Part shown: positions 11,443 through 62,799 of the stretch, piece by piece
Layout: each line of letters starts with the position of its first letter
How positions within the stretch are numbered: the stretch's first letter is position 1
Assembly: GCF_006345805.1 (NCBI RefSeq)
Contig: NC_043008.1
Span: 69,440,001 to 69,504,000, forward strand
Length of the DNA: 64,000 nucleotides
Direction of reading: 5' to 3'
DNA from: Octopus sinensis
Lineage: Eukaryota
Notes under the pieces: model-generated
The model's database searches: none
What the model was told of the DNA's origin: nothing
What the model saw: the letters and a program-made list of their open reading frames with translations, nothing else
Translations under genes and position numbers: made by a program

Positions 11443-11812
11443 AAACTAGAGCACTCAGAGAGCGCAGACCTCCACTAAGGCAACACCAACGTCCACTCAA
11501 CGATTAGCCGGAGATGATTTTTTAAATGAGAATATCTGAAATAAACTCGACTGCTCTCACAAACGAGAATACTAAAAATGAACCCGACTGCTCTCAAAAA
11601 TTAAGTAAAAAAAAAACGGAAAAATAATCCAGAATCCTTGTCCGGTATCAGATCGATCCCAAAATCTAATCAGTTCGTGCCAGTCACGAGGCCAAACATC
11701 CCTGAGAGTTTCATCTGAATCAATCCAGCGGTTCTTGAGATATCTTGTCACGGACAAACAAACAAACACGACTGAAACAATACCACCGTCTTCATTAGGG
11801 CGGAAGCAATAA
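11443..11812. mobile_element. Interspersed non-autonomous element (Helitron-like), family D copy
   Basis: Highly similar to 22120-22492 and, inverted, to 50372-50605. Has a caaa microsatellite and a GC hairpin end (ccgtcttcattagggcgg). Confidence 0.6.
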
Positions 11813-12568
11813 ACATATGTAACAGGATAGGTAATATTTATCTTTTAGCCTGGAGAGAAGAGAATACTTATGACCCCTCACAGGGTCTTTGACGTTTATG
11901 AGGAGTCGGAATCATATACTAAAGTCCGAGAGAACTTCCAACAGAGTGGACGCTCCTAAAATGCGCCCAAGATATCAAGTAGTGGTGTTAAAACTGAATA
12001 ACTGCTTAAGCCAAGTAGTCTATAGTGCAATTTGAATCACAACACAAGGATCCGGGTAGAGTAATGCAAAACATCCAGTGCGAGGTTTTTTTACATTTTC
12101 GCCAATCAACCATCATTGATTGCTACTATAAAGTAACGACCCTGAAAATACGAAAGTAAAAGTTGAACTCTGCAGCATTCGCACTCAGACTGAATATACT
12201 CTATCTGCTATGCTCCCTGATTTAACATGCTTGTTTAAAACAATTACAAACGAAAATTATAAGTTTACTTTCTAAGATTACTATTACCATCTTCAGAATA
12301 AGTATATTTCAGTAAAATTTATATACGATTATATATATATATATCAGAGACACATGTATACAAATCTATTAATACTAGTCTTGAAGACATCGAAATTAAA
12401 AACATTCGTAAAAATTGGTTCTTAGTCTATGATAAAACCTTCAGTAGATTTCTACACATCTAACCATTCTTTGACGTCATCTGAACGTAAGTCAATATAT
12501 TTGTATACAGACTTGATCCGATATTTATTCTATATGTCAATACAAACACACACACACACATACACACA

Positions 12569-16765: not shown

Positions 16766-17149
16766 TATATAAGTCCTATGACGGCTTGAAGTGGAACTTT
16801 CAGACATTCTTTTGTGTAGACAATCGGAAGCTAATATTTTTGGTATGTCGTCGCACACAGGGTACATAATTTCTTACTCCTACACAATTCGGCCTAAGAA
16901 TACATTTTAAATACTGTATAACTATTAATTTCTTATATATGACTCTTTTACTCGTTTCAGCCATGCGGCTGCGGTCATGCTGGAACAGAAGCGAAACGTT
17001 TGGCATCACTTGAAAAAGACAATTAATTCAGACAGAGAATATAAACATAAATATAATGGCGGTGCCCCAGCATGGCCACAGCTCAAAAGCTGAAACTGGA
17101 AAACATAAACATAAAATATAGAGTCTCTTACACTCGTTTCTAGAATAGG

Positions 17150-17450
17150 CAAGCACATGGATCATCATACTGAGTAAGGTTTCTTATGGGCGGTATATTC
17201 TATCATCAGAGAGGGAGAAGTCAGAGAGATGTAAGAATAAGGGAATATCTCCAGTTGAGGATATTAGTATATTCCAGCTTGTCAAAAATGGAGGAAGGGT
17301 CAGAATAAAATTGATATACGTTACGTAGTTCCATGATCGAATAAATAATACAGTTATAGGTTATGTCCATTAGCAGTTTGAAGTGAGAATATTCGTGGCA
17401 AGATATAGTTACAAATTTGAATAGAGAATGAATGAGGGTTTATTAGGAAA
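17150..17450 (-). mobile_element. Possible Penelope-like RT relic
   Basis: Minus strand DIPLFLHLSDFSLSDDRIYRP*ET resembles the PLE RT segment (S)LPFLDI..S....I.T....KPT. Very degenerate. Confidence 0.3.
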
Positions 17451-22119: not shown

Positions 22120-22492
22120 ACAAGAGCACTCAGAGAGTGCAAACCTCCACCAAGGCAACACCAATGTCCTCTCAACGATTAGTCAGAGATGATTATTAAA
22201 ATGAGAATATCTGTAATAAACTCGACTGCTCTCACAAACGAGAATACTAAAATTGATCCCGACCGCTCTCAAAAATTAATTTTAAAAAACCGGAAAAATA
22301 ATCCAGAATCCTTGTCCGGTACCGGATCGATCCCAAAATCTAATCAGTTTGTGCCATTCACGAGGCCAAACATCCCTGAACGTTTCATCAGAATTCATCC
22401 AGCGGTTCCTAAGACATCTTATCCACGGACAAACAAACGAACAAGCAAACACGACTGAAAACAATACCCCGCCTTCGCTAAGGCGGAAGTAA
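22120..22492. mobile_element. Family D copy (Helitron-like)
   Basis: Same sequence as 11443-11812, ending ccgccttcgctaaggcggaag. Confidence 0.6.
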
Positions 22493-22922
22493 TAATAATA
22501 ATAATAATAATAACAACATCAACAACAACAAAAATGGGAATAACAATGATAAAGGTTTCAAATTTTGGCACAAGGCCAGCAATTTTAAGGGGTCAATAGT
22601 CGATATCATCTAGTCCAGTACATGGAAAGATGAGCGGCAAATTTGATCACGATAGGATTTGAACTCGGAACATTAAAAGCTGTAGGAAATGCTGCTCAGC
22701 GTTTTTGACCGGTTCGCTAATGATTCTGTGAAACAACAGCAACAACAACAACAACAAAAACAATAACATCATTATCCTTATTTTAAGACGGCGAGCAAAC
22801 AGAATCATTAACACTCCAGACAATATGCTTAGTGGCATTTCGTCCGTCTTCACGTTCTTAGTTCAAATGCCAACAGAGTCGACTTTCCCTTTCATCCTCT
22901 CAGGGTCAGTAAAATAAGCACC

Positions 22923-24394: not shown

Positions 24395-26160
24395 ATAAAA
24401 TTAATGTCACCCACATATTTTTATTATCGATGACCTAAATTTATATTCTGGTAACATGAACATCATCAATAGACAATTAGAACTAGTTGCAAAATTCTCA
24501 CGAGATATAGGAATGTAGCTTGGGTAAGACAAATGTTCATACATGATAATCAACCGAGGAAAGATTGTTGACCAGACAGAGAGCATATGTATCAATGGCT
24601 TGTCTATCACCCCTGTCGATAATGATGAAGCGACGTGAAAATTGCAGACGTTGGTGCTGTGACTAAAACCAGAATAAAAGAGAGTACTTTTATAAATTCC
24701 GGAAGATATGAAAACTCAGAGCTGTCTTCATTTAATAAGACCATACCTCACAATGCATTTGCAGTGCTAGTGCTAGTACCAACATTTGGCATATTGGACT
24801 GGATACTCGATGAGATACATAGCCTAGGCATCAAAACCAGAAAGGCACTGATCACCACTGGCAACTTCTACAGCGACACCAATAGCATCTATGTGAGACA
24901 AAGTGATAGCGATAGAGGCATAAGATCAGTTCAAACAGCTTTTGAATATCACATTGCATCACTCAGACAACACCTGTTGGACAGTAAAGAAAGAAATGAA
25001 TACATCACAGGCATACTCAAAAATGAGAGCAACAGCATCTTCAGAGTTGAAAAAGAACTACTGAGAAAGGTATTCTGTGAATACAACTGTCTTTTGTGAC
25101 CCAAAATAACCTAGAATGGTTTACCTAAACAGAAGCTTGGAGGGGAAGCAAGTGTCTTACGAACAAAAATCAATACATGGGTATATATTCTATAAGCAAA
25201 AGAATAACAACAAGATTGACAGGATAAGTAGCTTCTCCTCGATGTCTTAGAGGAGAGAGCTAGTAAATACCTGATAAATAAGAGAGAGACAAAGATGCCA
25301 CCAACCCTTCACGTTGAGATAGAAAATGTCGGCTCTGCTCTATCTGGGTGGAAGATATCACTAGCGGCTGCCCTAAAATGACTACGAGATACTGCGTGGC
25401 CCTGAGGCATGATATAGTTGCAATGACTATTAACAACGCTATCTGCAGGAAGGATCATCCTGACGTTATACATCAAAGGCATGTCAGAATCAGCATTTAT
25501 TCACAGTTTTCTAAAAAAAAAAAAGAACACTGGTGGAACACTCCGATAGAAACAGTAATTCGGTGCAAACACAATAGACCTGATATTGTCTGGTGGGATA
25601 GGGACAAATATCATAAATTAATAAATAAAACATATGCATATATACATACATATATGTAAGTACCTACCTCTACATGTATATATATATATATATACATATA
25701 TGGGTACAGGACACCAAAAAAACGTCGAACACAATGAGAAACGAAAACATAAACACAAAACCAAGGAACTGGACATTTTTCTTAAACAACGAAAAAATAG
25801 AGTAGAGAGACAAATAACACAAGGAAAATTCCCCTTCTTCAGTCGCCATGGTCTCATCTACTCTGCGTTTCGAAGGTACTGTTATAGATGTCATCTGGCC
25901 AGCGGATGTAAATGCATCATTAAAAAAAGAGAACATTTAATGTGAATTAATGCGGAAATTACAGCTCTTGTCAGTGACAATGAATTATTATTTGTACTTA
26001 TCATCATTGGTGCACTAAGCTATGTACCAACAAATTTACACAAACACTTAGAAATACGTGGTTTTTCGAAGAAAGAGCAAATAACACTGACGCGGATTCT
26101 GCACATCCAATCTATTGACAGCTCTGTGTAGATTTGTAAAACATATCAACTATTGTCGAT
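24395..26160 (+). mobile_element. Degenerate R4/Dong-like non-LTR retrotransposon (RT end, zinc knuckle, REL endonuclease), interrupted at ~25615-25945
   Basis: Pieces in the expected order: HIFFIIDDLNLYS (RT xDD motif), LELVAKFSRDIGM, NAFAVLVLVPTFGILDW...RGIRSV, EDITSGC...RHD, WWNTPIETVIRCKHNRPDIVWWD and IIGALSYVP. Confidence 0.8.
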
Positions 26161-27899: not shown

Positions 27900-28320
27900 T
27901 CCACTACCACTACCACAGCTTTCATCTATCCACGGCTCAACAACTGTCTCCACCACCTCAACATATCCAGCAGCATTAATTCCAAGACCCAGACTGCAGA
28001 AAAATGCGAGGTGATATGACATGACCTTTGTTGCTCACCTATCCTAAAACCATCACCGTTGCTGGTAATTTAGTGGGGATCACCCGAGGACATCAGAAGA
28101 ATCAGCATATAACCATCAGTCATTTCTCTTGTTACACTTTTGATCTTGGTCGAAGTTATTTTTTCATCAGAGAAGAACCAAGGCATGCCATTTTCTAGAG
28201 GTGTTTCAACCTTGGCACGGATCAAATGGTTTTTCTGTGTCGTTGTAGAAATGAATTGGCTTCTCTCCAGAACATGATATTTGTATCGAAATCCTTGTGC
28301 ACCAGTTCTCATAGTCTAAC
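27900..28320 (-). mobile_element. Tc1/mariner transposase fragment, same family as 13794-15300
   Basis: Translates to RSQFISTTTQKNHLIRAK...GMPWFFSDEK and GLGINAAGYVEVVETVVEPWIDE. Confidence 0.75.
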
Positions 28321-29169
28321 CTTAACCCTAACTCTTACCCTAACCCTAACCTACCTTGAAATTCTTTGGCGGTGTCCCTTATTGATTTTTCGAGATCATC
28401 ATTGAAAATGCTTTGAACCCATTGGATGAATTGCTGTTTCCTTATATCGCAGGAATATTTAATTTATTTTTCGTTTAGATGCAGCTGAAACATTCCCACC
28501 AGAGGATTCCAGTTCCACATGAACTTTATATACAGAAGACGCTATAGGATTTAGAAAGTTGGTAAATTCTAAATTGCTGCTCCGTATATATGGCAAAAAT
28601 AACTACATATCTTTTCATTTCTTGTGTTAGCATTTTATCTTCTATGCGGGATCTGAAAGCAACAGGAAACTTTTACTTGATTTGAAGACAGTAATATACT
28701 TATAATTAAGTGTCCTCAAACACTATCCCTAACCCAAACCCTAATCCGTATTAAATTTTGAGAAGGAAACGTATTATAATGAACACTGACTTTATAATCA
28801 TTCATTGTGTGTATATACTTCAGGGTGATAACCTATTTATATGTTTATGTTGTGTATCTATGAAAATGTGTATGCAACAGGATTCTTCGTAGTTTTTATT
28901 AAACAAATTTAACCTGGATGTTTTGTTCCAAAGTATTTCACCAAGTGCCGCACAGTGGCACTAGATCTTGAACTACTTAGCTGCAATGAAAATTTGTAAA
29001 GCAGTCAGTCATACCTGCGCTCACATGAACAGTTCTTACTTCATCAACCACCTGTAAGAATTCTGACAAAGTGAACCTCGCTAAAATTTGAACTCACTGC
29101 ATAAATCAACCAAATAAAACTAGCTTGGATTTCTTCCCAACCGTCTACCAATTCCAACATAGATTAGTC

Positions 29170-38369: not shown

Positions 38370-39140
38370 AGTTCATCAGCTGATCAAGACACTCTCATGG
38401 CAAGTATCGAAAAGAGATTTATCTTTCGTCAGTTTTCTGGCCATTTGGTCTTGATAGCATTTCGTAACTCCTTAAGAAATTTGGCATAGTACTCTCCATT
38501 GATGATGCAGCCCTTCTGACGATAGTCTATAAACACAATGCCTTTTGCATGCCAAAAACTGAAGGTATCACCTTCCCTGAAAATGAGACGATTTTGGACT
38601 TCTTTGGATAGGTGCAGAGGGCTGTTTCCACTGAGGGATTGTCACTTTGTCTCTGTCTCAAAGTGCTGAAACCAATCTCATGCCGGGTTAGGAAACGTTC
38701 AAGAAAACCGGCTGGATCAGCCTCAAACAGATTTTCCCATGATGTGATCAGATGTCAAATGAGACATTTACCGAGCAGAAACCATCACCATGCCAAGATC
38801 ATAGTGCAGAATATTTTCAGCTCTCTCCCAGGATATGCTAATAGCATTGCTATTTGATTTATAGTCAACCGCCTGTCATTCAACAGCATGTGGTTAACGC
38901 GATTTATGCTTTCCTAGGTGGTGGCAGCTACAGGACGTCCAAACCCTGGGGTCATCTTCAAAACTTCTGTTCGTTTCCTAAATTCAGCTGCCAACATTCG
39001 TGCTGTTGATAAAACAGAAGCCTCATCTAGTATAACAACAATGTCAGCATGAATGTCCTTGGCGACGAAATTGTTTTTCTGCAGTTATTTGATAACACGA
39101 TGATGGCAATTTTTTCTCCTTTTTAAGTGACGTCGCTAGT
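38370..39140 (-). mobile_element. Degenerate mariner (Mos1-like) transposase relic
   Basis: Minus strand VIPSVFWHAKGIVFIDYRQKGCIINGEYYAKFLKELRNAIKTKW is a typical mariner catalytic-domain segment. Confidence 0.75.
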
Positions 39141-39315
39141 ATATATTGTTGTATGTATACACACAAATATAGAGATAAATATATATGCATATATTAACAA
39201 TTAAGGAACGGCCATAATAGGCCATTCACCCACTAGAAATAACAGCCAAAGCTTCTACCGCAAATAAAGATTAAATCCGTAAAGAGGAGAAAATTAAAAA
39301 AACATTTACCCTGTA

Positions 39316-39422
39316 ATTTCTTGTACGGTATACCGTTTCATCCGCTGTTTAATGGTAAACTAACCTGATTAAATTAAATCAAGCCAATCTTCCATAAGCC
39401 CTCGGATTCTTCAGCAAGAAAT
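39316..39422 (-). ncRNA. Type I hammerhead ribozyme, copy 1 (intact)
   Basis: Minus strand reads AUUUCUUG-CUGAAGA-AUCCG-[58 nt]-CGGAU-GAA-ACGG-UAUA-CCGU-A^CAAGAAAU. Stem I is 8 bp, the basal stem II is 5 bp, stem III is 4 bp, and the GUA cleavage site lies between 39324 and 39323. Confidence 0.92.
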
Positions 39423-39804
39423 AGCTCAAGTCGGAACAGATATTTACACGAGGCATACCCAATCTTGCCAAGGCAATATCTGACCTAAAATTTTCAAATC
39501 GTCGCACTCGCGCCAAATTTATCGGCAGCAAATAAAAATCAGCCGTCGATTCATTACGGAATTAACCAAAAAATTCATAATTAATCAATATAGGGTGGCA
39601 AGGAAAATTTTGTAGATTTATTGCCACCAGCGGCCCAGTGGGAAAAAATTAAATAGTCATAGACCATTTTTAAGTTCAACATTAACAATTAAGGAACGGC
39701 CATAATAGGCCATTCACCCACTAGAAATAACAGCCAAAGCTTCTACCGCAAATAAAGATTAAATCCGTAAAGAGGAGAAAATTAAAAAAAACATTTACCC
39801 TGTA

Positions 39805-39910
39805 ATTTCTTGTACGGTATACCGTTTCATCCGCTGTTTAATGGTAAACTAACCTGATTAAATTAAATCAAGCCAATCTTCCATAAGCCTCGGATTCTTC
39901 AGCAAGAAAT
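39805..39910 (-). ncRNA. Type I hammerhead ribozyme, copy 2
   Basis: Same core and stems as copy 1, with a 1-nt deletion in the stem II extension. Cleavage after 39813. Confidence 0.88.
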
Positions 39911-40287
39911 AGCTCAAGTCGGAACAGATATTTACACGAGGCATACCCAATCTTGCCAAGGCAATATCTGACCTAAAATTTTCAAATCGTCGCACTCGCG
40001 CCAAATTATCGGCAGCAAATAAATATCAGCCGTCGATTCCATTACGGAATTAACCAAAAAATCATAATTAATCAATATAGGGTGGCAGGAAAATTTTGTG
40101 AATTTTATTGCCACCAGCGGCCAGTGGGAAAAAATTAATAGTCATAGACCATTTTTAAGTTCAACATTAACAATTAAGGAACGGCCATAATAGGCCATTC
40201 ACCCACTAGAAATAACAGCCAAAGCTTCTACCGCAAATAAAGATTAAATCCGTAAAGAGGAGAAAATTAAAAAAAATTTACCCTGTA

Positions 40288-40392
40288 ATTTCTTGTACGG
40301 TATACCGTTTCATCCGTGTTTAATAGTAAACTAACCTGATTAAATTAAATCAAGCCAATCTTCCATAAGCCCTCGGATTCTTCAGCAAGAAT
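40288..40392 (-). ncRNA. Type I hammerhead ribozyme, copy 3
   Basis: Core intact. There are 1-nt deletions in stem I and next to stem II, possibly assembly errors. Cleavage after 40296. Confidence 0.75.
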
Positions 40393-40771
40393 AGCTCAAG
40401 TCGGAACAGATATTTACACGAGGCATACCCAATCTTGCCAAGGCAATATCTGACCTAAAATTTTCAAATCGTCGCACTCGCGCCAAATTTATCGGCAGCA
40501 AATAAATATCAGCCGTCGATTCCATTACGGAATTAACCAAAAAATTCATAATTAATCAATATAGGGTGGCAAGGAAAATTTTGTAGAATTTATTGCCACC
40601 AGCGGCCCAGGGGAAAAAATTAAATAGTCATAGACCATTTTTAAGTTCAACATTAACAATTAAGGAACGGCCATAATAGGCCATTCCCCACTAGAAATAA
40701 CAGCCAAAGCTTCTACCGCAAATAAAGATAAATCCGTAAGAGGAGAAAATTAAAAAAACATTTACCCTGTA

Positions 40772-40878
40772 ATTTCTTGTACGGTATACCGTTTCATCCG
40801 CTGTTTAATGGTAAACTAACCTGATTAAATTAAATCAAGCCAATCTTCCATAAGCCCTCGGATTCTTCAGCAAGAAAT
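40772..40878 (-). ncRNA. Type I hammerhead ribozyme, copy 4 (intact)
   Basis: Matches the copy 1 motif. Cleavage after 40780. Confidence 0.92.
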
Positions 40879-41260
40879 AGCTCAAGTCGGAACAGATATT
40901 TACACGAGGCATACCCAATCTTGCCAAGGCAATATCTGACCTAAAATTTTCAAATCGTCGCACTCGCGCCAAATTTATCGGCAGCAAATAAATATCAGCC
41001 GTCGATTCCATTACGGAATTAACCAAAAAATTCATAATTAATCAATATAGGGTGGCAAGGAAAATTTTGTAGAATTTTATTGCCACCAGCGGCCCAGTGG
41101 GAAAAAATTAAATAGTCATAGACCATTTTTAAGTTCAACATTAACAATTAAGGAACGGCCATAATAGGCCATTCACCCAAGAAATAACAGCCAAAGCTTC
41201 TACCGCAAATAAAGATTAAATCCGTAAACAGGAGAAAATTAAAAAAACATTTACCCTGTA

Positions 41261-41368
41261 ATTTCTTGTACGGTATACCGTTTCATCGCTGTTTAATGGT
41301 AAACTAACCTGATTAAATTAAATCAAGCCAATCTTCCATAAGCCCTCGGATTCTTCAGCAAGAGAAAT
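41261..41368 (-). ncRNA. Type I hammerhead ribozyme, copy 5
   Basis: Core intact, with a 1-nt deletion in stem II (catcg vs catccg) and a 2-nt insertion in stem I. Cleavage after 41269. Confidence 0.72.
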
Positions 41369-41752
41369 AGCTCAAGTCGGAACAGATATTTACACGAGGC
41401 ATACCCAATCTTGCCAAGGCAATATCTGACCTAAAATTTTCAAATCGTCGCACTCGCGCCAAATTTATCGGCAGCAAATAAATATCAGCCGTCGATTCCA
41501 TTACGGAATTAACCAAAAAATTCATAATTAATCAATATAGGGTGGCAAGGAAAATTTTGTAGAATTTTATTGCCACCAGCGGCCCAGTGGGAAAAAATTA
41601 AATAGTCATAGACCATTTTTAAGTTCAACATTAACAATTAAGGAACGGCCATAATAGGCCATTCACCCACTAGAAATAACAGCCAAAGCTTCTACCGCAA
41701 ATAAAGATTAAATCCGTAAAGAGGAGAAAATTAAAAAAACATTTACCCTGTA

Positions 41753-41859
41753 ATTTCTTGTACGGTATACCGTTTCATCCGCTGTTTAATGGTAAACTAA
41801 CCTGATTAAATTAAATCAAGCCAATCTTCCATAAGCCCTCGGATTCTTCAGCAAGAAAT
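41753..41859 (-). ncRNA. Type I hammerhead ribozyme, copy 6 (intact)
   Basis: Matches the copy 1 motif. Cleavage after 41761. Confidence 0.92.
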
Positions 41860-42245
41860 AGCTCAAGTCGGAACAGATATTTACACGAGGCATACCCAAT
41901 CTTGCCAAGGCAATATCTGACCTAAAATTTTCAAATCGTCGCACTCGCGCCAAATTTATCGGCAGCAAATAAATATCAGCCGTCGATTCCATTACGGAAT
42001 TAACCAAAAAATTCATAATTAATCAATATAGGGTGGCAAGGAAAATTTTGTAGAATTTTATTGCCACCAGCGGCCCAGTGGGAAAAAATTAAATAGTCAT
42101 AGACCATTTTTAAGTTCAACATTAACAATTAAGGAACGGCCATAATAGGCCATTCACCCACTAGAAATAACAGCCAAGCTTCTACCGCAAATAAAGATTA
42201 AATCCGTAAACAGGAGAAAATTAAAAAAAAAACATTTACCCTGTA

Positions 42246-42351
42246 ATTTCTTGTACGGTATACCGTTTCATCCGCTGTTAATGGTAAACTAACCTGATTA
42301 AATTAAATCAAGCCAATCTTCCATAAGCCCTCGGATTCTTCAGCAAGAAAT
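42246..42351 (-). ncRNA. Type I hammerhead ribozyme, copy 7
   Basis: Core and stems intact, with a 1-nt deletion in the stem II extension. Cleavage after 42254. The array ends about 7 nt beyond stem I. Confidence 0.88.
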
Positions 42352-42707
42352 AGCTCAATATATGCATATATATATATATACATGTTTGCATCCGTTCATA
42401 TGCTTACATGTATAATATAAACACACACACACGCCCACAAACATATACACACACACAGACACGTATATATGTCATGATCATAATTTAACGTCCGTTGTCC
42501 ATGCTGGCATGGGTTGGAAGACTTTACCAGGGCTAGCAAACTGGAAGACTGCACTAAACTCCAGTCTCATTTGATATGGTTTCTACGGCTGGATGCCCCT
42601 ACTAATGCCAACCACTCCAGTCGTGTAATTGTCGCTTTCACGTGCCTTTTGCATGACACCAGTATCTGCACGACTATGATTTTACTTGACTTAATAGGTC
42701 TTATCGC

Positions 42708-43460
42708 TATATATATAAAACTGAGAATGTGTGTCTGTCTGTCTGTCTGTCCCTAAAACTTAAGATCTACACAACCAATTTCATTCAAATTTTACACATT
42801 CCTTACTTAGGGTCCGGGGAGTGTCATCGGCAAAACAATTTTTTACTTTTTCCCTAGGGCGAGCCCACAGCAATATCATATCTTCTCCACTATGATTCCC
42901 TAAAACTCGAGAACTACACAACCAATTGCATTCAAATTTTACACATGCCTTACTTAGGGTCCATGTGGTTTCATGGGCAAAAAATGTTCAACTTCTTGCC
43001 TAGGGCGAAGCCCATAGCAATATCATATCTTCTCCACTATTTCAGTAGTACGTGTTAAAAGTGAAACAAAAACATTTCTCTATTTTATGTCAGATACTTT
43101 CACTTTAACAATAAAAATTAGAGATAATAATAACAATTGAATTATATGTAGTAAGTAATAATTAAAATCAAACTAAAGTATGATATAATCGTAACATATA
43201 AAAAGTAAAAATAGCAATTGGTATAAAATTGCATCAATGACTTGAACTTGAATAAGTGGTTTCACATGAATGGGAATAAATTAAAAATAAAATTAGTGTG
43301 CAGAAATGGAATAGTCCAGATGGAGTTGTGCACATACCCTTTACCACGTCTTTTACATTAGATTATCTGCTAATTAGCTAGCATTAAGTATCTATATGAA
43401 GTTTGGCTCTATGTAATATCTGTTTTCTCGAGCAGCCGCTTCTACTGAGTACTGCTGTTG
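42708..43460. mobile_element. Non-autonomous Helitron/Helentron-like (DINE-1-type) element with internal ~145-bp duplication
   Basis: Starts tatatataaaactgagaatgt followed by (GTCT)n. The block ccctaaaact...ctacacaaccaat...tatcttctccactat occurs twice (~42750-42895 and ~42897-43041). Confidence 0.5.
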
Positions 43461-46335: not shown

Positions 46336-47297
46336 CGCAGGTGTCACTGTGTAGGAGGCATTGTTTCCCAACCACATGGTTCCGGGTTTATCCCCATGCA
46401 TGGCAATTTGTGCAAGTTTTTTTTACTGTAGCCTCGGACCGACCAAAGCCTAGTGAGTAAATTTGGTCGATGGAAACTGAAAGAAACCCATCGTGTATAT
46501 ATATATATATATATATATATATCTGTACCTATGTATGTATACATATATATGTATGCATGTAACCATATGAAAGTACCCTGTTGATATTTTTGAAATTCAA
46601 AAGAAGGACCTTCGGATCTAGGTTAGAAACCGGCTCCTTGTCCATTGGCAAGAAATCTTGAAATAAACTGAATAATGACATACATACATATGCGCGTGCG
46701 CGCACACACACGCAAACACACACATACATATTTGGAGAGATAGGCACATTGATGAACGTTTTTGCTTACAATGACAAGATATACTTCAAATATAAAAGTG
46801 TGTGTACATTTGATTAGAAACCTAAATGTATTGAGTTTCGTGTTGAAAAAGTTTAAAACAATCAAAGTAAGAAAGCAGCGTGACAACATATAAGCAATAA
46901 TATTTTAAACTCATCGAAATAGAATTAACGAGGAAGCTTTGATTGGTTACCGAATATACTATTAAGCTACGCGTCACTCACTCATTTATTCAAATTTCAT
47001 GGGCAGAACATGTTATATTCATCTATTTACAAGAAAAGCACTTGATATTTTCCTCCTTCAGTATCATGCGTATAAAACACATATAAGTAAAGTTGGAGAC
47101 TATTGTTAATAGAGTTTTAATGTTGGATATTTAGATGATTTGTTTCTTTTCCAATATATGAATATCTTTCATAATATGATAAATCCATTATATAGGAAAT
47201 AATATTTGATAGTTGGAAATTCATCAATAAATATCAATGGAATTTCTCCAACAATTTACCACTTCTGATCTTTTGCTAAATGCTGAAGTTGTAATTG

Positions 47298-49404: not shown

Positions 49405-50312
49405 CTTTTTTTTCTTTTTTCTTTCAAATTTGCTTCCATTTCTTGCCGAGTGTCTTCCCGACTCCTAGGGCAAAGAAACTCATAGTATACATTGGTAGGC
49501 CATTAAACTAAACTCACTAGTTCGTTCATTTTTTTTAAAGTTAAATTAAAATACATCGGTAGTAATAGTTCTCACATCAACAGTGCTCTTCTCCATACGT
49601 GTGATGTACCAGTTAAGACAATCTTTTGCACTTCTTGCAGGGATGGTAAGCCAGGGATCATTCTCATATAATTTTCGGTTCCCTTCTTGATCATTCCTAG
49701 TGCTCCTACGATCATTGGTATTGTAACCGCCTTGAGATGCCACATTTTCTCAATTTCAATGAGCAGGTCTTTATATTTTCTGAGCTTGTCAAACTCTTTC
49801 GCCGAGATATTATGATCACAGGGGATGCTCATGTCGATCAATAAGCAAACTTTATTGTTTTGGTCTTTCACAACAATATCTGGTTTATTGGTTCGGTCTG
49901 TATGTACTGGAAAGTCCCACAGAATCGTTACATTTTCTCCTTCAGTTACAGCTTCAGGGTGGTGATTATACCACTTGTCGGCAGTTTTGATATTGTAATG
50001 CCGACTTATTAGCCAGTGTAGATATTGGCCAACTCTGTCATGTATTAATTTATACTCCACTGGTGCTAAGACTTTACATCCAGAGATTAGGTGGTCCACT
50101 GTTTCAATCAAGTCGTTGCAGAATCGGCATTTTGAGTCTGCTCCATTTTTCATCACATTGGCCAGGTAGTTCCGGGTAGTTCCGGCTTTGATCTTGAGCA
50201 GCCAGGATGAAACCTTCGCTCTCTGGTTTTAGCCCTGAGCTCCGTAGCCACTGATGGATTTGCTTCTGGTCAACATCAGCTTGTTTGCTGCGGGCCACAT
50301 ATTTGCCGTTTA
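49405..50312 (-). mobile_element. 5'-truncated R4/Dong-clade LINE 3' end (CCHC knuckle, REL endonuclease, 3' UTR) inserted in (TAA)n
   Basis: ORF 49572-50156 contains CRFC-x8-H-x4-C and KPDIVV...LLIDMSIP (PD..D). The upstream frame has WLRSSGLKPESEGFILAAQDQ. The frameshift is caused by a 10-bp duplication at 50165-50184. (ATT)n lies on both sides. Confidence 0.9.
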
Positions 50313-57644: not shown

Positions 57645-57864
57645 TCTTTTATTCATTTACTTGTTTCAGTAATTTGACTGTGGCCATGCTGGAGCACCAC
57701 CTTTAGTCGAGCAAATCGACCCCAGGACGTATTCTTTGTAAGCCTAGTACTTATTCTATCGGTTTCTTTTGCTGAACCGCTAAGTTACGGGGACGTAAAC
57801 ACACCAGCATCGGTTGTCAAGCGATGTTGAGGGGACAAACACAGACACACAAGCACACACACAC

Positions 57865-57895
<31 letters not shown>

Positions 57896-58078
57896 CATAC
57901 ATATAGATATATACGACGGGATTCTTTCAGTTTCCGTCTACCAAATCCACTCACAAGGCTTTGGTCGGCCCGAGGCTATAGTAGACTACACTTGCCCAAG
58001 GTGCCACGCAGTGGGACTGAACCCGGAACCATGTGGATGGTAAGCAAGCTACTTCCCACACAGCCACTCCTGCGCCTA
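57645..58078 (-). mobile_element. SINE family B copy (full length)
   Basis: Reverse-complement match to 59963-60373. Confidence 0.85.
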
Positions 58079-59156
58079 TATTCATTTGTTGTTTCAATTT
58101 GCCTTATTCATATTATGAAGTATGACAAGCAAAGGGATAAAAACATAAATACAATGGGGTCTATTGATACAAGCGTATTTACTGTTTAACAAGGTCTCAT
58201 GGCCTAGTGGTTACGGTGTTGCACTCACGATCGCGAGATTGTGATTTCAATTCCAAGACCGGAAAACACTTCATCTCACGCTGCTCTGCGTCCACTTTGA
58301 CATCTGGCTTATGGTTCACTGTGCATCTCTTCAGACAACGTCAGTTCGATGGAGGGATGGCACAAACACTTGTTCATTATACACAAATCAATTGAACAGT
58401 TTGTTCAGCAAGTAATTGCAGAGCCGTCTTTCTCGGATTACCAGAGACAACCACCATATATTATTTTATACTGATGGTGCTCAATATTAACATCGACCCG
58501 TAGAGCATTTCATTATATAACGACAGCTGGTAATCATTCTATCGCTACAATTTTATTATGTGAGTTAAGCCAGTGTAAACCAACATTATTTTAACTAAAC
58601 GATTATGATTAATGTGCATTTGGAGTATTCAAGTTCTTTCATGTGTCGAATTTTATAAGGGTTTGATAGATATCGATTTTAAATGATTATTATTAGTAAT
58701 AATTTATCGATATCAAGATTGTATATTCTAGAGATAATTTAAGTGAACTCTATTCTTTTGGATCGGTACTGATGGATTTAATGTTGATTGTAACATTATG
58801 TTGAATGTAAGATAAATGCTTAGATGTATTGCGTTTCTTATGGGAGTGACAGTTAGGTTTAATCTGTAACTACGAAGGGGAGATAATTAACATTAATTAT
58901 TTATGGGGTTGATAGAGGTATTTCTCGCACTTCCGTGTAAGCAGCATTCTCCATTGCAGTCACATACGGCCACATGATAATACCACACATACACACACAC
59001 GCACGCACATATACACACACATTCATTCTACTTAGTTGTGGTTAAAAGCTGAACGTTTACCATACTTCCTGTACCCACAAACACACAGACACACACAGAC
59101 GAGCGCGTGCACACACACACACATGCATATACATACACAAGCGATTGCACACTGCA

Positions 59157-59847: not shown

Positions 59848-59962
59848 CACATATGTATGGATATACTCCCTGTATAACATCAATCCATACTTATTTCATC
59901 TGATGTTATGCATAAATCTGTAGGAATTAATAGGAAATTATATATATACATATTATATATAT

Positions 59963-60373
59963 AGGCGCAGGAGTGGCTGTGTGGTAAGTAGCTTGCTAAC
60001 CAACCACATGGTTCTGGGTTCAGTCCCACTGCGTGGCATCTTGGGCAAGTGTCTTCTGCTATAGCCCCCGGGCCGACCAATGCCTTGTGAGTGAATTTCG
60101 TAGACGGAAACTGAAAGAAGCCTGTCGTATATATGTATATATATATATGTATGTGTGTATGTGTTTGCGTGTCTGTGTTTGTCCCCCTAGCATCGCTTGA
60201 CAACCGATGCTGGTGTGTTTATGTCCCCGTCACTTAGCGGTTCGGCAAAAGAAAAGAGACCGATAGAATAAGTACTGGGCTTACAAAGAATAATAAGTCC
60301 CGGGGTCGATTTGCTCGACTAAAGGCGGTGCTCCAGCATGGCCGCAGTCAAATGACTGAAACAAGTAAAAGAG
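59963..60373 (+). mobile_element. tRNA-derived SINE, family B (internal TA/TG microsatellite)
   Basis: Head aggcgcaggagtggctgtgtggtaag...ggttcagtccc and tail gactgaaacaagtaaaagag. Many copies in the window. Confidence 0.85.
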
Positions 60374-60427: not shown

Positions 60428-60790
60428 ACTCTTTTACTCTTTTATTTGTTTCAGTCAATTAACTGTGGCCATGATGGACCACCGCCTTTAGGCGAGCAAA
60501 TCGACCCCAGGAGTTATTCTTTGTAAGCCTAGTAATTATTCTATCGGTCTCTTTTGCCGAACCACTACGTTACAGGGACATAAACACACCAGCATCGGTT
60601 GTCAAGCGATGTTGAGGGAACAAACATAGACACACAAACACACACACACATACATATATATATACATATATACGACGTCTACCAAATCCACTCACAAAGC
60701 TTGGGTCGGCCCGAGGATATAGTAGAAGTCACATGCCCAAGGTGCCACGCAGTGGGACTGAACCCGGAACCATGTGGTTGGTAAGCAAGC
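60428..60790 (-). mobile_element. SINE family B copy, inverted next to 59963-60373
   Basis: Reverse-complement match with an internal deletion. Confidence 0.8.
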
Positions 60791-61086
60791 CAGTGCGTGT
60801 GTGTACACATATACACACCCATACAAATAAGTATATATATATTTATGATGGTATGTATGAATGTTTATATACATGAGCCTACGAGTCTATGCATGTATCA
60901 GTGAAGTTGCCCGAACATCGTGGCCAGCGTGTTGGATTCACAATCTCAAAGCTGTGGTTTCAATTCATGGCCTGATCTATCTTAGCGTATGACAATACAT
61001 TTCAAGTTGCTCAGGTTTACTGCATGGAAAACAATCGCCAGTTTACTTGTGGTGCAGTTCTCTCTCTCTCTCTCTCTCTCTTCTCT

Positions 61087-61990: not shown

Positions 61991-62799
61991 GCTCTCGAAC
62001 TGAAACTAAAACAGAAAAAAAAAACATATCTATTCACATGCATATATAAATTGTAAACAAATTATCAATAATATGTTTAATTAGCATAAATTAAGGATCG
62101 TATGGGAACTTTGAAAGTATTTGGCTTAAATATTAATTTTCAGACAGGTACAAGTATCTTAAAAATTGTAGACTTAACTTTAGACCTAAAGACAGGTAAG
62201 TATCATGCGTCCCTGAAAGCTAATAGATAAATATATTACATTAATATACACTCTAACCACACGTTATATAATCATTACAAATTTAATCAATAACGTTAGT
62301 AATAGTATATCGAGTATGTTTACAGATGAAGATAAATTTCGCCGTGGGTCAAATCATTTCAAAGGTGCTTAAGAAGAGAGGTTATATATTAAAAAAATAT
62401 ACAAACAATAAATTAAAAACTAAACAAGCGCAGGCATGGCTGCGTGCTAAGAAATTTCCTTTCTAACCACGTAGTTCTGAATTCAGTCCTACTGCATGGC
62501 ACCTTTGGGTAAAGGTTTCTCGTATTATAGCTTCGACCGACAAAAGCTTTGTGAGTAGATTTATATGTAAGACGGAATCTGAAAGCCACACGATGTGCGT
62601 GCGTGCGTGCGTGTGTGTGTGTAGGTAACCGGGATCTTTCTTTCTTGCTTTGTAGTTTATACAAGGTAAACCTATTTTATTATATTCGTTGTAGTTACCA
62701 TGCGTATTTATTGATAGTGAGAAATTTGTAGCTTGGGAGTGTTAGCTCCTCTTTCTAGCAAGTGGTACTTTGATACCCTACTTTATTTATTTTACCTAT

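What the first reader, a model, noticed from the sequence alone, without database searches (positions are those of the whole stretch)
39193..42358. Retrozyme-like array: ~490-bp non-coding tandem unit, each carrying a complete type I hammerhead ribozyme
Seen in sequence: seven minus-strand motifs AUUUCUUG-CUGAAGA-AUCCG...CGGAU-GAA-ACGG(UAUA)CCGU-A^CAAGAAAU, with the conserved core nucleotides, three paired stems and a GUA cleavage triplet, spaced 483-493 nt apart, with no coding capacity. Established: tandem non-coding units with one type I hammerhead each are the hallmark of metazoan non-LTR retrozymes. Their multimeric transcripts self-cleave to monomers that circularise, and they are thought to be mobilised by Penelope-like element RTs. 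Inference: this is a cephalopod retrozyme family producing a ~490-nt linear/circular RNA. That is longer than the roughly 170-400 nt monomers I recall being described, and I do not recall an octopus example, though I cannot check novelty here. It would otherwise be annotated as an anonymous satellite.
Basis: partly seen in the sequence, partly recalled or inferred. Interest (0 to 1): 0.93.

Follow-up and report, generated by a model that had tools for sequence, protein, structure and literature searches.

The report
Tandem repeat carrying self-cleaving hammerhead ribozymes
This is a 3.2-kb array of 6.5 near-identical ~490-bp non-coding units, each carrying a well-formed type I hammerhead self-cleaving RNA motif; it fits the known "retrozyme" class of animal mobile elements, so it is a good new example of a known kind and not a new kind.

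Summary
TRF finds one array at 39193-42358 (period 488, 6.5 copies, 97% match). The minus strand carries seven hammerhead motifs with cleavage sites 483-493 nt apart. Six have an intact core and helices of 8 (one 6), 5 and 4 bp; one copy is damaged by indels. A strict hammerhead descriptor matched 0 times in 200 shuffled windows.

Rfam finds nothing at gathering score or at E<=10 over the array. On a single copy, RF00163 (type I) aligns end to end at 21.4 bits (cutoff 34), penalised mainly by a ~57-nt insertion in helix II. The unit is non-coding, 36% GC and has no LTRs. Its RNA is strongly structured on the ribozyme strand only. The array sits in a (TA)n tract between two copies of the 14-mer ATATATGCATATAT, a likely target-site duplication.

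Best reading: a non-LTR retrozyme array. Expression, cleavage, circles, covariation and genome-wide dispersal could not be tested, because no relatives were retrievable.

The novelty claims are weaker. Monomers of about 500 nt (pDo500) and 51-972 bp are published, retrozymes are described in a mollusc, and 235 type I hammerheads were counted in the giant squid genome. Cephalopod origin could not be verified. Verdict: new member of a known kind, moderate interest.

The parts
39193..42358 (-). Tandem array of 6.5 units of ~488-491 bp. It is non-coding and 36.4% GC. On the ribozyme strand the first unit starts 7 nt upstream of helix I, and the last unit is cut after ~240 nt.
   Evidence: TRF; unit alignment; GC; ORFs of at most 66 aa with no homologues
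42246..42351 (-). Hammerhead copy 1 (106 nt). Helices I/II/III are 8/5/4 bp and the core is intact. A 1-nt deletion lies in the distal helix II extension. A17 at 42254.
41753..41859 (-). Hammerhead copy 2 (107 nt), consensus sequence. A17 at 41761.
41261..41368 (-). Hammerhead copy 3 (108 nt), damaged as assembled. It has a 2-nt insertion in the 5' arm of helix I (AUUUCUCUUG) and a 1-nt deletion in the 3' arm of helix II (C-GAU). A17 at 41269.
   Evidence: (relaxed scan only)
40772..40878 (-). Hammerhead copy 4 (107 nt), consensus sequence. A17 at 40780.
40288..40392 (-). Hammerhead copy 5 (105 nt). A 1-nt deletion shortens helix I to 6 contiguous bp. One C>U change and one 1-nt deletion lie in the helix II extension. 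The core is intact. A17 at 40296.
39805..39910 (-). Hammerhead copy 6 (106 nt). A 1-nt deletion lies in the internal loop just beyond helix II. The core and helices are intact. A17 at 39813.
39316..39422 (-). Hammerhead copy 7 (107 nt), consensus sequence. A17 at 39324. Rfam RF00163 aligns over 39318-39420 at 21.4 bits.
39181..39194 (.). One copy of the 14-nt direct repeat ATATATGCATATAT (a palindrome) at the array end. It overlaps TRF's array boundary by 2 nt. Candidate target-site duplication.
42358..42371 (.). Second copy of ATATATGCATATAT at the other array end, overlapping the boundary by 1 nt. It is followed by a (TA)n/(TG)n microsatellite.
   Evidence: microsatellite visible

Best explanation
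The array is a non-LTR retrozyme locus: a non-autonomous, non-coding retroelement whose unit is a ~491-nt structured RNA with one type I hammerhead.

Shown here (sequence and computation):
- Each unit carries, on the minus strand, AUUUCUUG / CUGAAGA / AUCCG-[~57-nt G.U-rich extension]-CGGAU / GAA / ACGG-UAUA-CCGU / A^ / CAAGAAAU.
- All invariant core positions are present (C3 U4 G5 A6 G8 A9, G12 A13 A14, A15.1-U16.1, H17=A). The predicted cut is after GUA.
- The whole array is bracketed by a 14-nt direct repeat inside a (TA)n tract.

Inferred life cycle, following the published retrozyme model:
1. Read-through or Pol II transcription of the minus strand gives a multimeric RNA. Six T4-T7 runs per unit argue against Pol III.
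2. Each hammerhead folds as it is transcribed, since all three helices lie within 107 nt, and cuts after A17. [quoted passage not shown]
3. A host tRNA-type ligase circularises the monomers.
4. In the full-length RNA the catalytic fold is predicted to lie 3.9 kcal/mol above the ground state, which would protect the circle from re-cleavage.
5. A reverse transcriptase supplied in trans, most plausibly from a Penelope-like element with a preference for (TA)n targets, copies the circle by rolling-circle, target-primed reverse transcription. That would yield a multimeric insertion of identical units flanked by a target-site duplication, which is what the locus looks like.
For: Motif and array:
- Array and motif confirmed.
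- 0 strict descriptor hits in 200 shuffled windows.
- RF00163 (type I) aligns over model positions 1-45 of 45 with no non-canonical pair, E=0.0033 for the single-copy search. Two decoy loci get no hammerhead hit under the same settings.

Folding:
- In a 118-nt context the minimum-free-energy fold is the three-way hammerhead junction, -36.3 kcal/mol.
- The HHR region folds far better than shuffles, z=-4.7.
- The circular 491-nt monomer has MFE -138.5 kcal/mol with z=-4.7 and 61% of bases paired. The complementary strand reaches only -97.7.
- The helix II extension is -17.9 kcal/mol in sense and -7.0 in antisense, with 5 G.U among 18 pairs. The structure is therefore specific to the ribozyme strand.
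- Helix III plus its loop (ACGGUAUACCGU) is palindromic, as in canonical metazoan type I hammerheads (PMC4209133).

Retrozyme features:
- No other ribozyme and no hammerhead on the other strand.
- No LTR-like repeats. No coding capacity. GC 36%.
- The 14-mer ATATATGCATATAT occurs only 3 times in 64 kb, and two of those are exactly at the array ends. A match of 12 nt or more at random positions with the same span occurs in 7 of 20,251 trials.
- Units differ by 5 substitutions and 29 one-base indels in 3166 nt, as expected for copies made in one event.

Literature:
- Definition and life cycle of retrozymes (PMC7229834).
- (TA)n insertion bias of some PLEs, and PLEs in cephalopods (PMC8557442).
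- 75% of retrozyme families have at most seven units per array.
Against: - Rfam does not call it. There is nothing at gathering score on the window and nothing at E<=10 on the 3.6-kb region. The single-copy score of 21.4 bits is below the 34-bit cutoff and would correspond to E of about 1-2 at window scale.
- The pair next to the core is A10.1-U11.1 in place of the highly conserved G10.1-C11.1.
- Helix sizes (8 bp, 5 bp plus a long extension, 4 bp) differ from the canonical metazoan 6/4/1-2 bp. No loop 1-loop 2 tertiary contact is recognisable, so cleavage may be slow.
- In the full circle or a dimer, helix I is not in the predicted MFE. The catalytic fold is +3.9 kcal/mol and helix I pair probability is about 1%.
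- No homologues could be retrieved, so there is no covariation evidence.
- Only one locus is present in the window, so dispersal is unshown.
- The flanking repeat lies in TA-rich DNA. When both boundaries are placed in TA-rich sequence, a match of 12 nt or more arises in ~10% of trials, or ~1% if it must contain G or C.
- No PLE was seen among the window ORFs tested.
- There are no expression data.
Confidence: 0.72

Rival explanations
1. Ordinary hammerhead-bearing satellite DNA, like the classical newt satellite 2 or cricket pDo500 descriptions. On this reading the array grew in place by unequal crossing-over or replication slippage and is kept uniform by homogenisation. The ribozyme only trims transcripts, and no retrotransposition is involved.
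For: Only one array and no dispersed copies are present in 64 kb. Units are nearly identical, which homogenisation also produces. The flanking repeat lies in low-complexity TA-rich DNA, where matches of 12 nt or more are not rare (~10%).
Against: The 14-mer with its GC interruption sits exactly at both ends and occurs only once elsewhere in the window. The TA-rich null gives ~1% for a match containing G or C. Local expansion does not create a duplication of flanking sequence. The field now reads such satellites as retrozymes (PMC7229834), so this rival differs only in how the array was amplified.
Confidence: 0.15
2. A hammerhead-like relic that no longer cleaves. The core is present, but the A10.1-U11.1 pair, the long helix II, the lack of loop-loop contacts and the competing folds make it inactive, so the array is a dead satellite.
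For: The Rfam score is sub-threshold. It departs from the conserved G10.1-C11.1 pair and from canonical helix sizes. The catalytic fold lies 3.9 kcal/mol above the MFE in full-length RNA. One of the seven copies is broken.
Against: All invariant core nucleotides and three uninterrupted helices are kept in 6 of 7 copies. The local MFE is the hammerhead fold. Compensatory changes at 10.1/11.1 exist in the cricket hammerhead (PMC2837043). Mussel retrozyme hammerheads without canonical loop contacts still cleave at ~0.1 per min. Most differences between copies look like assembly indels.
Confidence: 0.12
3. A tandemised terminal piece (pseudo-LTR) of an autonomous Penelope-like element whose coding part lies elsewhere or was lost. 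On this reading it is not an independent retrozyme family.
For: PLE pseudo-LTRs carry type I hammerheads and form tandems. Xenopus retrozymes are sister to PLE pLTRs. The insertion is in (TA)n, a known PLE target.
Against: There is no RT or GIY-YIG coding sequence in or next to the array. The neighbours are a mariner remnant and microsatellites. Metazoan PLE hammerheads are minimal, with little or no helix III and a 4-5 bp helix I, whereas this one has a 4-bp helix III and an 8-bp helix I. The array is bounded by its own flanking repeat.
Confidence: 0.08
4. A chance match to a short consensus, multiplied sevenfold by the tandem repeat.
For: The seven copies count as one independent observation. 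Rfam does not reach its threshold.
Against: There were 0 strict matches in 25.6 Mb of shuffled sequence. The observed helices (8/5/4 bp) exceed the descriptor minima. RF00163 aligns full-length, whereas the decoys do not. Strong strand-specific structure is present.
Confidence: 0.02

Closest known systems
Metazoan non-LTR retrozymes (Cervera & de la Pena 2020, PMC7229834), e.g. the Mytilus galloprovincialis family (350-390 bp) and the Acropora millepora family (220-245 bp)
   Same: Head-to-tail arrays of non-coding, AT-rich units. One type I hammerhead per unit on a single strand. No LTR, PBS or PPT. A flanking duplication longer than 4 bp. A strongly self-paired monomer RNA. As in the mussel family, the hammerhead lacks the archetypal loop 1-loop 2 nucleotides, and the catalytic fold is not the predicted ground state of the circle.
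   Different: The unit is longer (~491 nt) than the 170-400 nt given in that paper. Helix II carries a ~57-nt extension, helix III is a stable 4 bp, helix I is 8 bp, and 10.1-11.1 is A-U. Expression, circles and cleavage were shown for those families and not for this one.
pDo500 satellite of Dolichopoda cave crickets (Rojas et al. 2000; PMC2837043)
   Same: A ~500-bp satellite unit with one hammerhead that processes multimeric transcripts to monomers. Natural variation at the 10.1/11.1 pair is documented.
   Different: It is an insect family with no sequence relation claimed. The pDo500 hammerhead is compact (49 nt, or 68 nt in the double-hammerhead form), whereas this one is 107 nt because of the helix II extension.
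Vertebrate non-LTR retrozyme families surveyed by Li, Clavereau & Pollet 2026 (bioRxiv 10.64898/2026.07.22.740005)
   Same: The unit length falls within their 51-972 bp range. An array of ~7 units matches their finding that 75% of families have at most seven units. They propose derivation from PLE pseudo-LTRs.
   Different: Their survey covers vertebrates plus a few insects and one coral, with no molluscs. A relation of this unit to a PLE terminus could not be tested here.
Minimal hammerheads in Penelope-like element pseudo-LTRs (Cervera & de la Pena 2014, PMC4209133)
   Same: Type I topology, tandem context, a larger than usual helix II, and palindromic helix III positions.
   Different: Those motifs have almost no helix III and a 4-5 bp helix I, keep G10.1-C11.1, act as dimers, and flank an RT-endonuclease ORF. 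Here helix III is 4 bp, helix I is 8 bp, and there is no ORF.
Rfam RF00163 Hammerhead_1 hits counted in the giant squid genome (235 loci; PMC6962438)
   Same: Type I hammerheads in a cephalopod genome, if the window is cephalopod.
   Different: Those loci passed Rfam thresholds and were only counted, not described as retrozymes. This family falls below the Rfam cutoff and would not have been counted.

Membership tests
Hammerhead ribozyme, type I | Invariant catalytic core: C3 U4 G5 A6 N7 G8 A9, G12 A13 A14, A15.1-U16.1, H17 (not G) | tested here: met
   CUGAAGA ... GAA-A ... U-A is present in all 7 copies. It aligns to the RF00163 core columns.
Hammerhead ribozyme, type I | Three helices around the core, with helix I open (5' and 3' ends in helix I) and helices II and III closed | tested here: met
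   Helix I is 8 bp, helix II is 5 bp plus an extension, and helix III is 4 bp with a UAUA loop in 5 copies; one further copy has a 6-bp helix I. The MFE of the 118-nt context is this junction.
Hammerhead ribozyme, type I | Score at or above the curated Rfam gathering threshold for RF00163 (34 bits) | tested here: not met
   No hit at gathering score or at E<=10 on 3.6 kb. The single-copy search gives 21.4 bits, with ~57 nt inserted in loop II and 4 extra nt in helix III.
Hammerhead ribozyme, type I | Conserved G10.1-C11.1 pair closing helix II at the core | tested here: not met
   The pair is A10.1-U11.1 in all copies. The pair is called highly conserved in PMC4209133. Compensated variants are known in pDo500.
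Hammerhead ribozyme, type I | Canonical metazoan architecture: helix I 6 bp and helix II 4 bp with interacting loops, helix III 1-2 bp with a small palindromic loop | tested here: not met
   The helices are 8 bp, 5 bp plus a ~57-nt extension, and 4 bp. Only the palindromic helix III and loop are kept. Tertiary contacts cannot be assessed with these tools.
Hammerhead ribozyme, type I | Compensatory covariation in the helices among relatives | not testable with these tools
   Array copies are ~99.8% identical by substitutions. No relatives were found by protein handle, DNA patterns or exact ORF look-up.
Hammerhead ribozyme, type I | Site-specific self-cleavage after H17 | not testable with these tools
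   Needs in vitro transcription.
Metazoan non-LTR retrozyme | Head-to-tail tandem units, each with one type I hammerhead in the same orientation | tested here: met
   6.5 units, 7 motifs, all on the minus strand, spacing 483-493 nt.
Metazoan non-LTR retrozyme | Unit of a few hundred bp (150-450 bp in PMC7229834; 51-972 bp in the 2026 survey) | tested here: met
   488-491 bp. This is just above the 2020 range and inside the 2026 range.
Metazoan non-LTR retrozyme | Non-coding, with no LTR, PBS or PPT | tested here: met
   The longest ORF is 66 aa with no homologue. The only non-microsatellite repeats within ±3.5 kb are the units themselves and an unrelated 147-bp duplication. PBS and PPT were not searched for explicitly, but there is no LTR to anchor them.
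Metazoan non-LTR retrozyme | GC content below 50% | tested here: met
   36.4%.
Metazoan non-LTR retrozyme | Target-site duplication longer than 4 bp, when present | tested here: inconclusive
   The 14-nt repeat ATATATGCATATAT sits at both ends and occurs 3 times in the window. P is about 3e-4 against random positions, but about 1-10% when both ends lie in TA-rich DNA.
Metazoan non-LTR retrozyme | Monomer RNA predicted to be stable and highly self-paired | tested here: met
   Circular MFE is -138.5 kcal/mol with z=-4.7 and 61% of bases paired. The antisense strand reaches -97.7.
Metazoan non-LTR retrozyme | [quoted passage not shown] | not testable with these tools
   No transcriptome of the source organism is reachable.
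Metazoan non-LTR retrozyme | Multiple dispersed loci in the genome (mobility) | not testable with these tools
   Only this locus is present in the 64-kb window. The genome is not available.
Metazoan non-LTR retrozyme | Co-occurrence with autonomous Penelope-like elements in the same genome | not testable with these tools
   None of the 10 window ORFs scanned is a PLE. PLEs are reported in cephalopods, but the source organism is unverified.
Autonomous Penelope-like element | ORF encoding a reverse transcriptase with a GIY-YIG endonuclease between pseudo-LTRs | tested here: not met
   There is no ORF longer than 66 aa in the array. The neighbours are a mariner remnant and microsatellites.
Plant LTR retrozyme | Type III hammerheads in two LTRs, PBS and PPT, and 4-bp TSDs | tested here: not met
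   The topology is type I. There are no LTRs. The flanking repeat is 12-14 nt.
Integrated viroid-like or deltavirus-like circular RNA replicon | Ribozymes in both polarities (or a delta-type ribozyme), and for deltavirus-like agents an antigen ORF | tested here: not met
   There is no hammerhead on the plus strand even with the relaxed descriptor. No other ribozyme family is found on either strand at E<=10. There is no meaningful ORF.

The most novel reading that the evidence does not exclude
This would be the first described cephalopod retrozyme family. Its type I hammerhead carries a ~57-nt G.U-rich helix II extension and an A10.1-U11.1 pair that keep it below Rfam's threshold, so Rfam-based counts such as the 235 loci in giant squid would systematically miss it. 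The 6.5-unit array of near-identical units, bounded by a 14-nt duplication in a (TA)n tract, would be the footprint of a single rolling-circle reverse-transcription and integration event by a (TA)n-targeting Penelope-like element. That would be direct genomic evidence for a mobilisation model that is so far hypothetical.
Probability: 0.3. Interest if true: 0.55.

Novelty: new member of a known kind. Interest (0 to 1): 0.35.

Why it matters
If confirmed, it adds a lineage and an architectural variant to the retrozyme class: a long helix II, a stable helix III and a non-G-C 10.1-11.1 pair. It also shows that covariance-model thresholds miss such variants, so hammerhead and retrozyme counts in invertebrate genomes are underestimates. 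The locus itself is a multimer of near-identical units with a discrete flanking duplication in a (TA)n tract, which makes it a clean test case for the proposed rolling-circle, PLE-driven mobilisation of circular RNAs. It does not open a new category. Retrozymes, hammerhead satellites of this size and mollusc examples are all published.

Tried and rejected
1. Rfam at gathering thresholds on the whole window and at E<=10 on 39000-42600 gave no hammerhead. Only the single-copy search showed RF00163, below threshold.

2. I used the unit's longest spurious ORF (66 aa) as a handle to find other copies or transcript contigs among 5.8 billion proteins. No candidates were found. Exact look-ups of the 66-aa and 42-aa ORFs in the assembly index found nothing on record.

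3. DNA pattern scans. The family-specific pattern found 0 matches in metagenome contigs. The core-plus-helix-III pattern found 3 matches in metagenome contigs, all in 58-62% GC bacterial contigs with no helix I, so they are chance. The same pattern found 0 matches in viral contigs. The prokaryotic genome collection and the phage, plasmid and E. coli BLAST collections were not scanned because they are irrelevant to an animal satellite.

4. Organism identification through the LINE-like ORF at 49575-50228 gave 65-68% identity to proteins of shrimp, cnidarians, echinoderms and a tunicate, with no near-identical hit. The contigs behind the best hits have uninformative names. Cephalopod origin is neither confirmed nor refuted.

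5. Two extra hammerhead-like matches from the relaxed scan (17125-17213 and 58225-58338) were rejected. Neither gets an Rfam hammerhead hit, and the first folds no better than shuffled sequence.

6. The mir-297, mir-466 and snoRNA sub-threshold hits beside the array (42358-42472) are TG/TA microsatellite artefacts.

7. Literature strings. This ribozyme's 16-mer is not printed in any searchable paper. No paper links retrozymes or hammerhead ribozymes to an octopus element. The Cervera 2020 supplement held as text has no matching sequence.

8. I did not scan every window ORF fragment against Pfam for a PLE. A negative result in 64 kb would say nothing about the genome.

Full report
**Observation**

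I read the minus strand directly and scanned it with a hammerhead descriptor I wrote. The descriptor requires CUGANGA, helix II of at least 4 bp, GAAA, helix III of at least 3 bp, UH, and helix I of at least 5 bp.

- Six copies pass the descriptor. Five have helices of 8, 5 and 4 bp, and one has a 6-bp helix I.
- The seventh copy (41261-41368) passes only a relaxed version. As assembled, it has a 2-nt insertion in the 5' arm of helix I and a 1-nt deletion in the 3' arm of helix II.
- The strict descriptor matched nothing else in the window on either strand.
- It matched nothing in 200 dinucleotide-preserving shuffles of the window, about 25.6 Mb in total.

**Is it a hammerhead?**

The motif reads AUUUCUUG / CUGAAGA / AUCCG...CGGAU / GAA / ACGG-UAUA-CCGU / A / CAAGAAAU. 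Every invariant core position is present: C3 U4 G5 A6 G8 A9, G12 A13 A14, the A15.1-U16.1 pair, and A at position 17. The topology is type I, with helix I open.

Rfam does not report it at curated thresholds, nor at E<=10 over the 3.6-kb region. Given a single 131-nt copy, the type I model RF00163 aligns from model position 1 to 45 with no non-canonical pair. It scores 21.4 bits against a cutoff of 34, with E=0.0033 for that small search. The alignment shows where the score is lost: about 57 nt inserted in loop II and 4 extra nt in helix III.

As a control, I gave two hammerhead-like decoys from my relaxed scan the same lax search. Neither received a hammerhead hit, and one folds no better than shuffled sequence.

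Thermodynamic folding agrees with the hammerhead reading. In a 118-nt context the minimum-free-energy structure is exactly the three-way junction, at -36.3 kcal/mol. The region folds far better than shuffles, z=-4.7.

Departures from the canonical metazoan type I motif, as described in PMC4209133:
- Helix I is 8 bp instead of 6.
- Helix II is 5 bp followed by internal loops and a 14-bp hairpin, instead of 4 bp and a loop.
- Helix III is a stable 4 bp instead of 1-2 bp.
- The pair next to the core is A10.1-U11.1 instead of the highly conserved G-C.

Helix III plus its loop (ACGGUAUACCGU) is a perfect palindrome. That is a canonical trait, and it would also allow a double-hammerhead form.

**The unit and the array**

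- Coding: the longest ORF is 66 aa, with no relative among 5.8 billion proteins.
- Composition: 36.4% GC.
- Copies elsewhere: BLAST finds none in the window.
- Other repeats: no LTR-like repeats bracket the array. The only non-microsatellite repeats within ±3.5 kb are its own units and an unrelated 147-bp duplication.
- Other ribozymes: none on either strand, and no hammerhead on the plus strand.

The 491-nt monomer, folded as a circle, has an MFE of -138.5 kcal/mol with z=-4.7 and 61% of bases paired. The complementary strand reaches only -97.7 kcal/mol. The helix II extension is -17.9 kcal/mol in sense and -7.0 in antisense, because 5 of its 18 pairs are G.U. The structure is therefore specific to the ribozyme strand, as expected if that strand's RNA is the functional product.

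Six runs of four to seven T per unit on that strand argue against Pol III transcription of multimers. This point is an inference.

One caution applies. In the full circle or a dimer, helix I is not in the predicted ground state. The catalytic fold costs +3.9 kcal/mol, and helix I pair probability is about 1%. The model therefore predicts that cleavage depends on folding during transcription, and that the mature circle is protected from re-cleavage. Cervera & de la Pena make a similar remark about some mussel retrozyme circles.

**Boundaries**

The array is bracketed by two copies of the 14-mer ATATATGCATATAT, at 39181-39194 and 42358-42371. These overlap TRF's array boundaries by 2 nt and 1 nt. 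The array sits in a (TA)n/(TG)n tract beside a decayed mariner element.

How likely is the flanking repeat by chance?
- The 14-mer occurs only once more in the 64 kb.
- Against random positions with the same span, a boundary match of 12 nt or more occurs in 7 of 20,251 trials.
- If both boundaries are placed in TA-rich sequence, the rate rises to about 10%, or about 1% if the match must contain G or C.

I read it as a probable target-site duplication of 12-14 nt, not a proven one. (TA)n is a documented preferred target of some Penelope-like elements, and PLEs are reported in cephalopods (PMC8557442; PMC6962438).

The units differ by 5 substitutions and 29 single-base indel events in 3166 nt, and 25 of the 29 indels are deletions. 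This pattern looks more like long-read assembly error than divergence. The copies are probably almost identical, as expected if they were made in one rolling-circle event or very recently homogenised.

**Mechanism**

The anatomy matches the published definition of metazoan non-LTR retrozymes (PMC7229834). The features I could test were met or nearly met: tandem units, one type I hammerhead each, non-coding, no LTRs, low GC, a flanking duplication longer than 4 bp, and a self-paired monomer.

The most likely life cycle is therefore the published one:
1. A multimeric minus-strand transcript is made.
2. The hammerheads cleave after GUA as the RNA is transcribed.
3. This releases ~491-nt monomers with 5'-OH and cyclic-phosphate ends.
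4. A host tRNA-type ligase circularises them.
5. A PLE reverse transcriptase copies the circle and inserts a multimer.

Only the sequence anatomy and the folding are shown here. Transcription, cleavage, circles, mobilisation and the identity of the reverse transcriptase are inferred.

**What could not be done**

No relatives could be retrieved, so helix covariation could not be tested.
- The spurious-ORF handle failed, both by homology search and by exact look-up.
- Two metagenome scans and one viral scan gave nothing apart from three chance matches in GC-rich bacterial contigs with no helix I.

The source organism could not be identified.
- The LINE-like ORF at 49575-50228 has 65-68% identity to proteins of shrimp, cnidarians, echinoderms and a tunicate.
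- The underlying contig names are uninformative.
- A TTAGGG-type interstitial repeat at 28316-28351 and 36.7% GC are compatible with a mollusc but prove nothing.

**Comparison and novelty**

- Size: the claim that the monomer exceeds known sizes does not hold. The pDo500 hammerhead satellite is about 500 bp, and a 2026 survey reports retrozyme consensus lengths of 51-972 bp, with most families having at most seven units per array.
- Molluscs: retrozymes are experimentally characterised in the mussel.
- Cephalopods: the giant squid genome paper counts 235 Rfam type I hammerheads.
- Not found: I found no paper describing a cephalopod retrozyme or this sequence.

The locus is best called a new member of a known kind, with an unusual hammerhead periphery that hides it from standard annotation. 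The most interesting open possibility is that this bounded multimer in a (TA)n tract is a clean footprint of rolling-circle, PLE-mediated integration.

**Verdict**

The feature is real and the annotation is correct in kind. Function is inferred, and novelty is modest. Interest 0.35. Confidence in the retrozyme reading 0.72.

Noticed in passing
window 38432-39140 (minus strand): A decayed mariner-type transposase remnant with frameshifts and stops lies immediately next to the array. The fragment 38432-38641 matches Pfam Transposase_1 at E=1e-10. The retrozyme array therefore lies in a TE-rich, microsatellite-rich stretch.
   Followed up: partly
window 49575-50228 (minus); related fragment 25318-25656 (plus): A C-terminal tail of a non-LTR retrotransposon ORF with a weak zf-RVT match. 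It is 65-68% identical to proteins from shrimp, cnidarians, echinoderms and a tunicate, so the family is spread widely among marine invertebrates. No near-identical protein exists in the collection.
   Followed up: partly
window 39193-42358: Differences among the array units are 29 single-base indel events (25 of them deletions) against 5 substitutions. This looks like uncorrected long-read assembly error, not divergence. The two indels that disable hammerhead copy 3 may therefore not be real.
   Followed up: partly
window 28316-28351: (CTAACC)6, a short interstitial TTAGGG-type telomeric repeat.
   Followed up: no
window 42750-43040: A 147-bp unit duplicated in tandem (about 81-86% identity) some 400 bp from the array. 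It is unrelated in sequence to the retrozyme unit.
   Followed up: no
window 46347-46622, 57776-58186, 59883-60218, 60616-60873, 62416-62741: A short interspersed repeat recurs at least five times. It is visible as the same pseudo-peptide (…PRSGTEPGTMW…/…CHAVGLNPEPCGW…) in stop-free frames, usually next to TG/TA microsatellites. It is probably a SINE-like element.
   Followed up: no
window 11575-11844 (minus) and 22285-22518 (minus): Two copies of another repeat share a conserved pseudo-peptide (…RNRW.DSDET.RDVWPR.WH.LIRFWDRS.TGQGFWIIFP…). No Pfam match was sought.
   Followed up: no
window 17125-17213 and 58225-58338 (minus): Two loose hammerhead-like matches: CUGANGA…GAAA with helices of at least 3, 3 and 2 bp. 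Neither gets a hammerhead hit under the lax single-locus Rfam search, and the first folds no better than shuffled sequence. Both were judged to be chance.
   Followed up: yes
window 42358-42472: Sub-threshold Rfam hits to mir-297, mir-466 and a snoRNA fall on the TG/TA microsatellite flanking the array. They are low-complexity artefacts.
   Followed up: yes
whole window: Microsatellite density is very high: TRF returns 146 rows, mostly TA, TG, GA, AAT, TATC and ACAT runs. Rfam finds no RNA gene at gathering score anywhere in the 64 kb.
   Followed up: no
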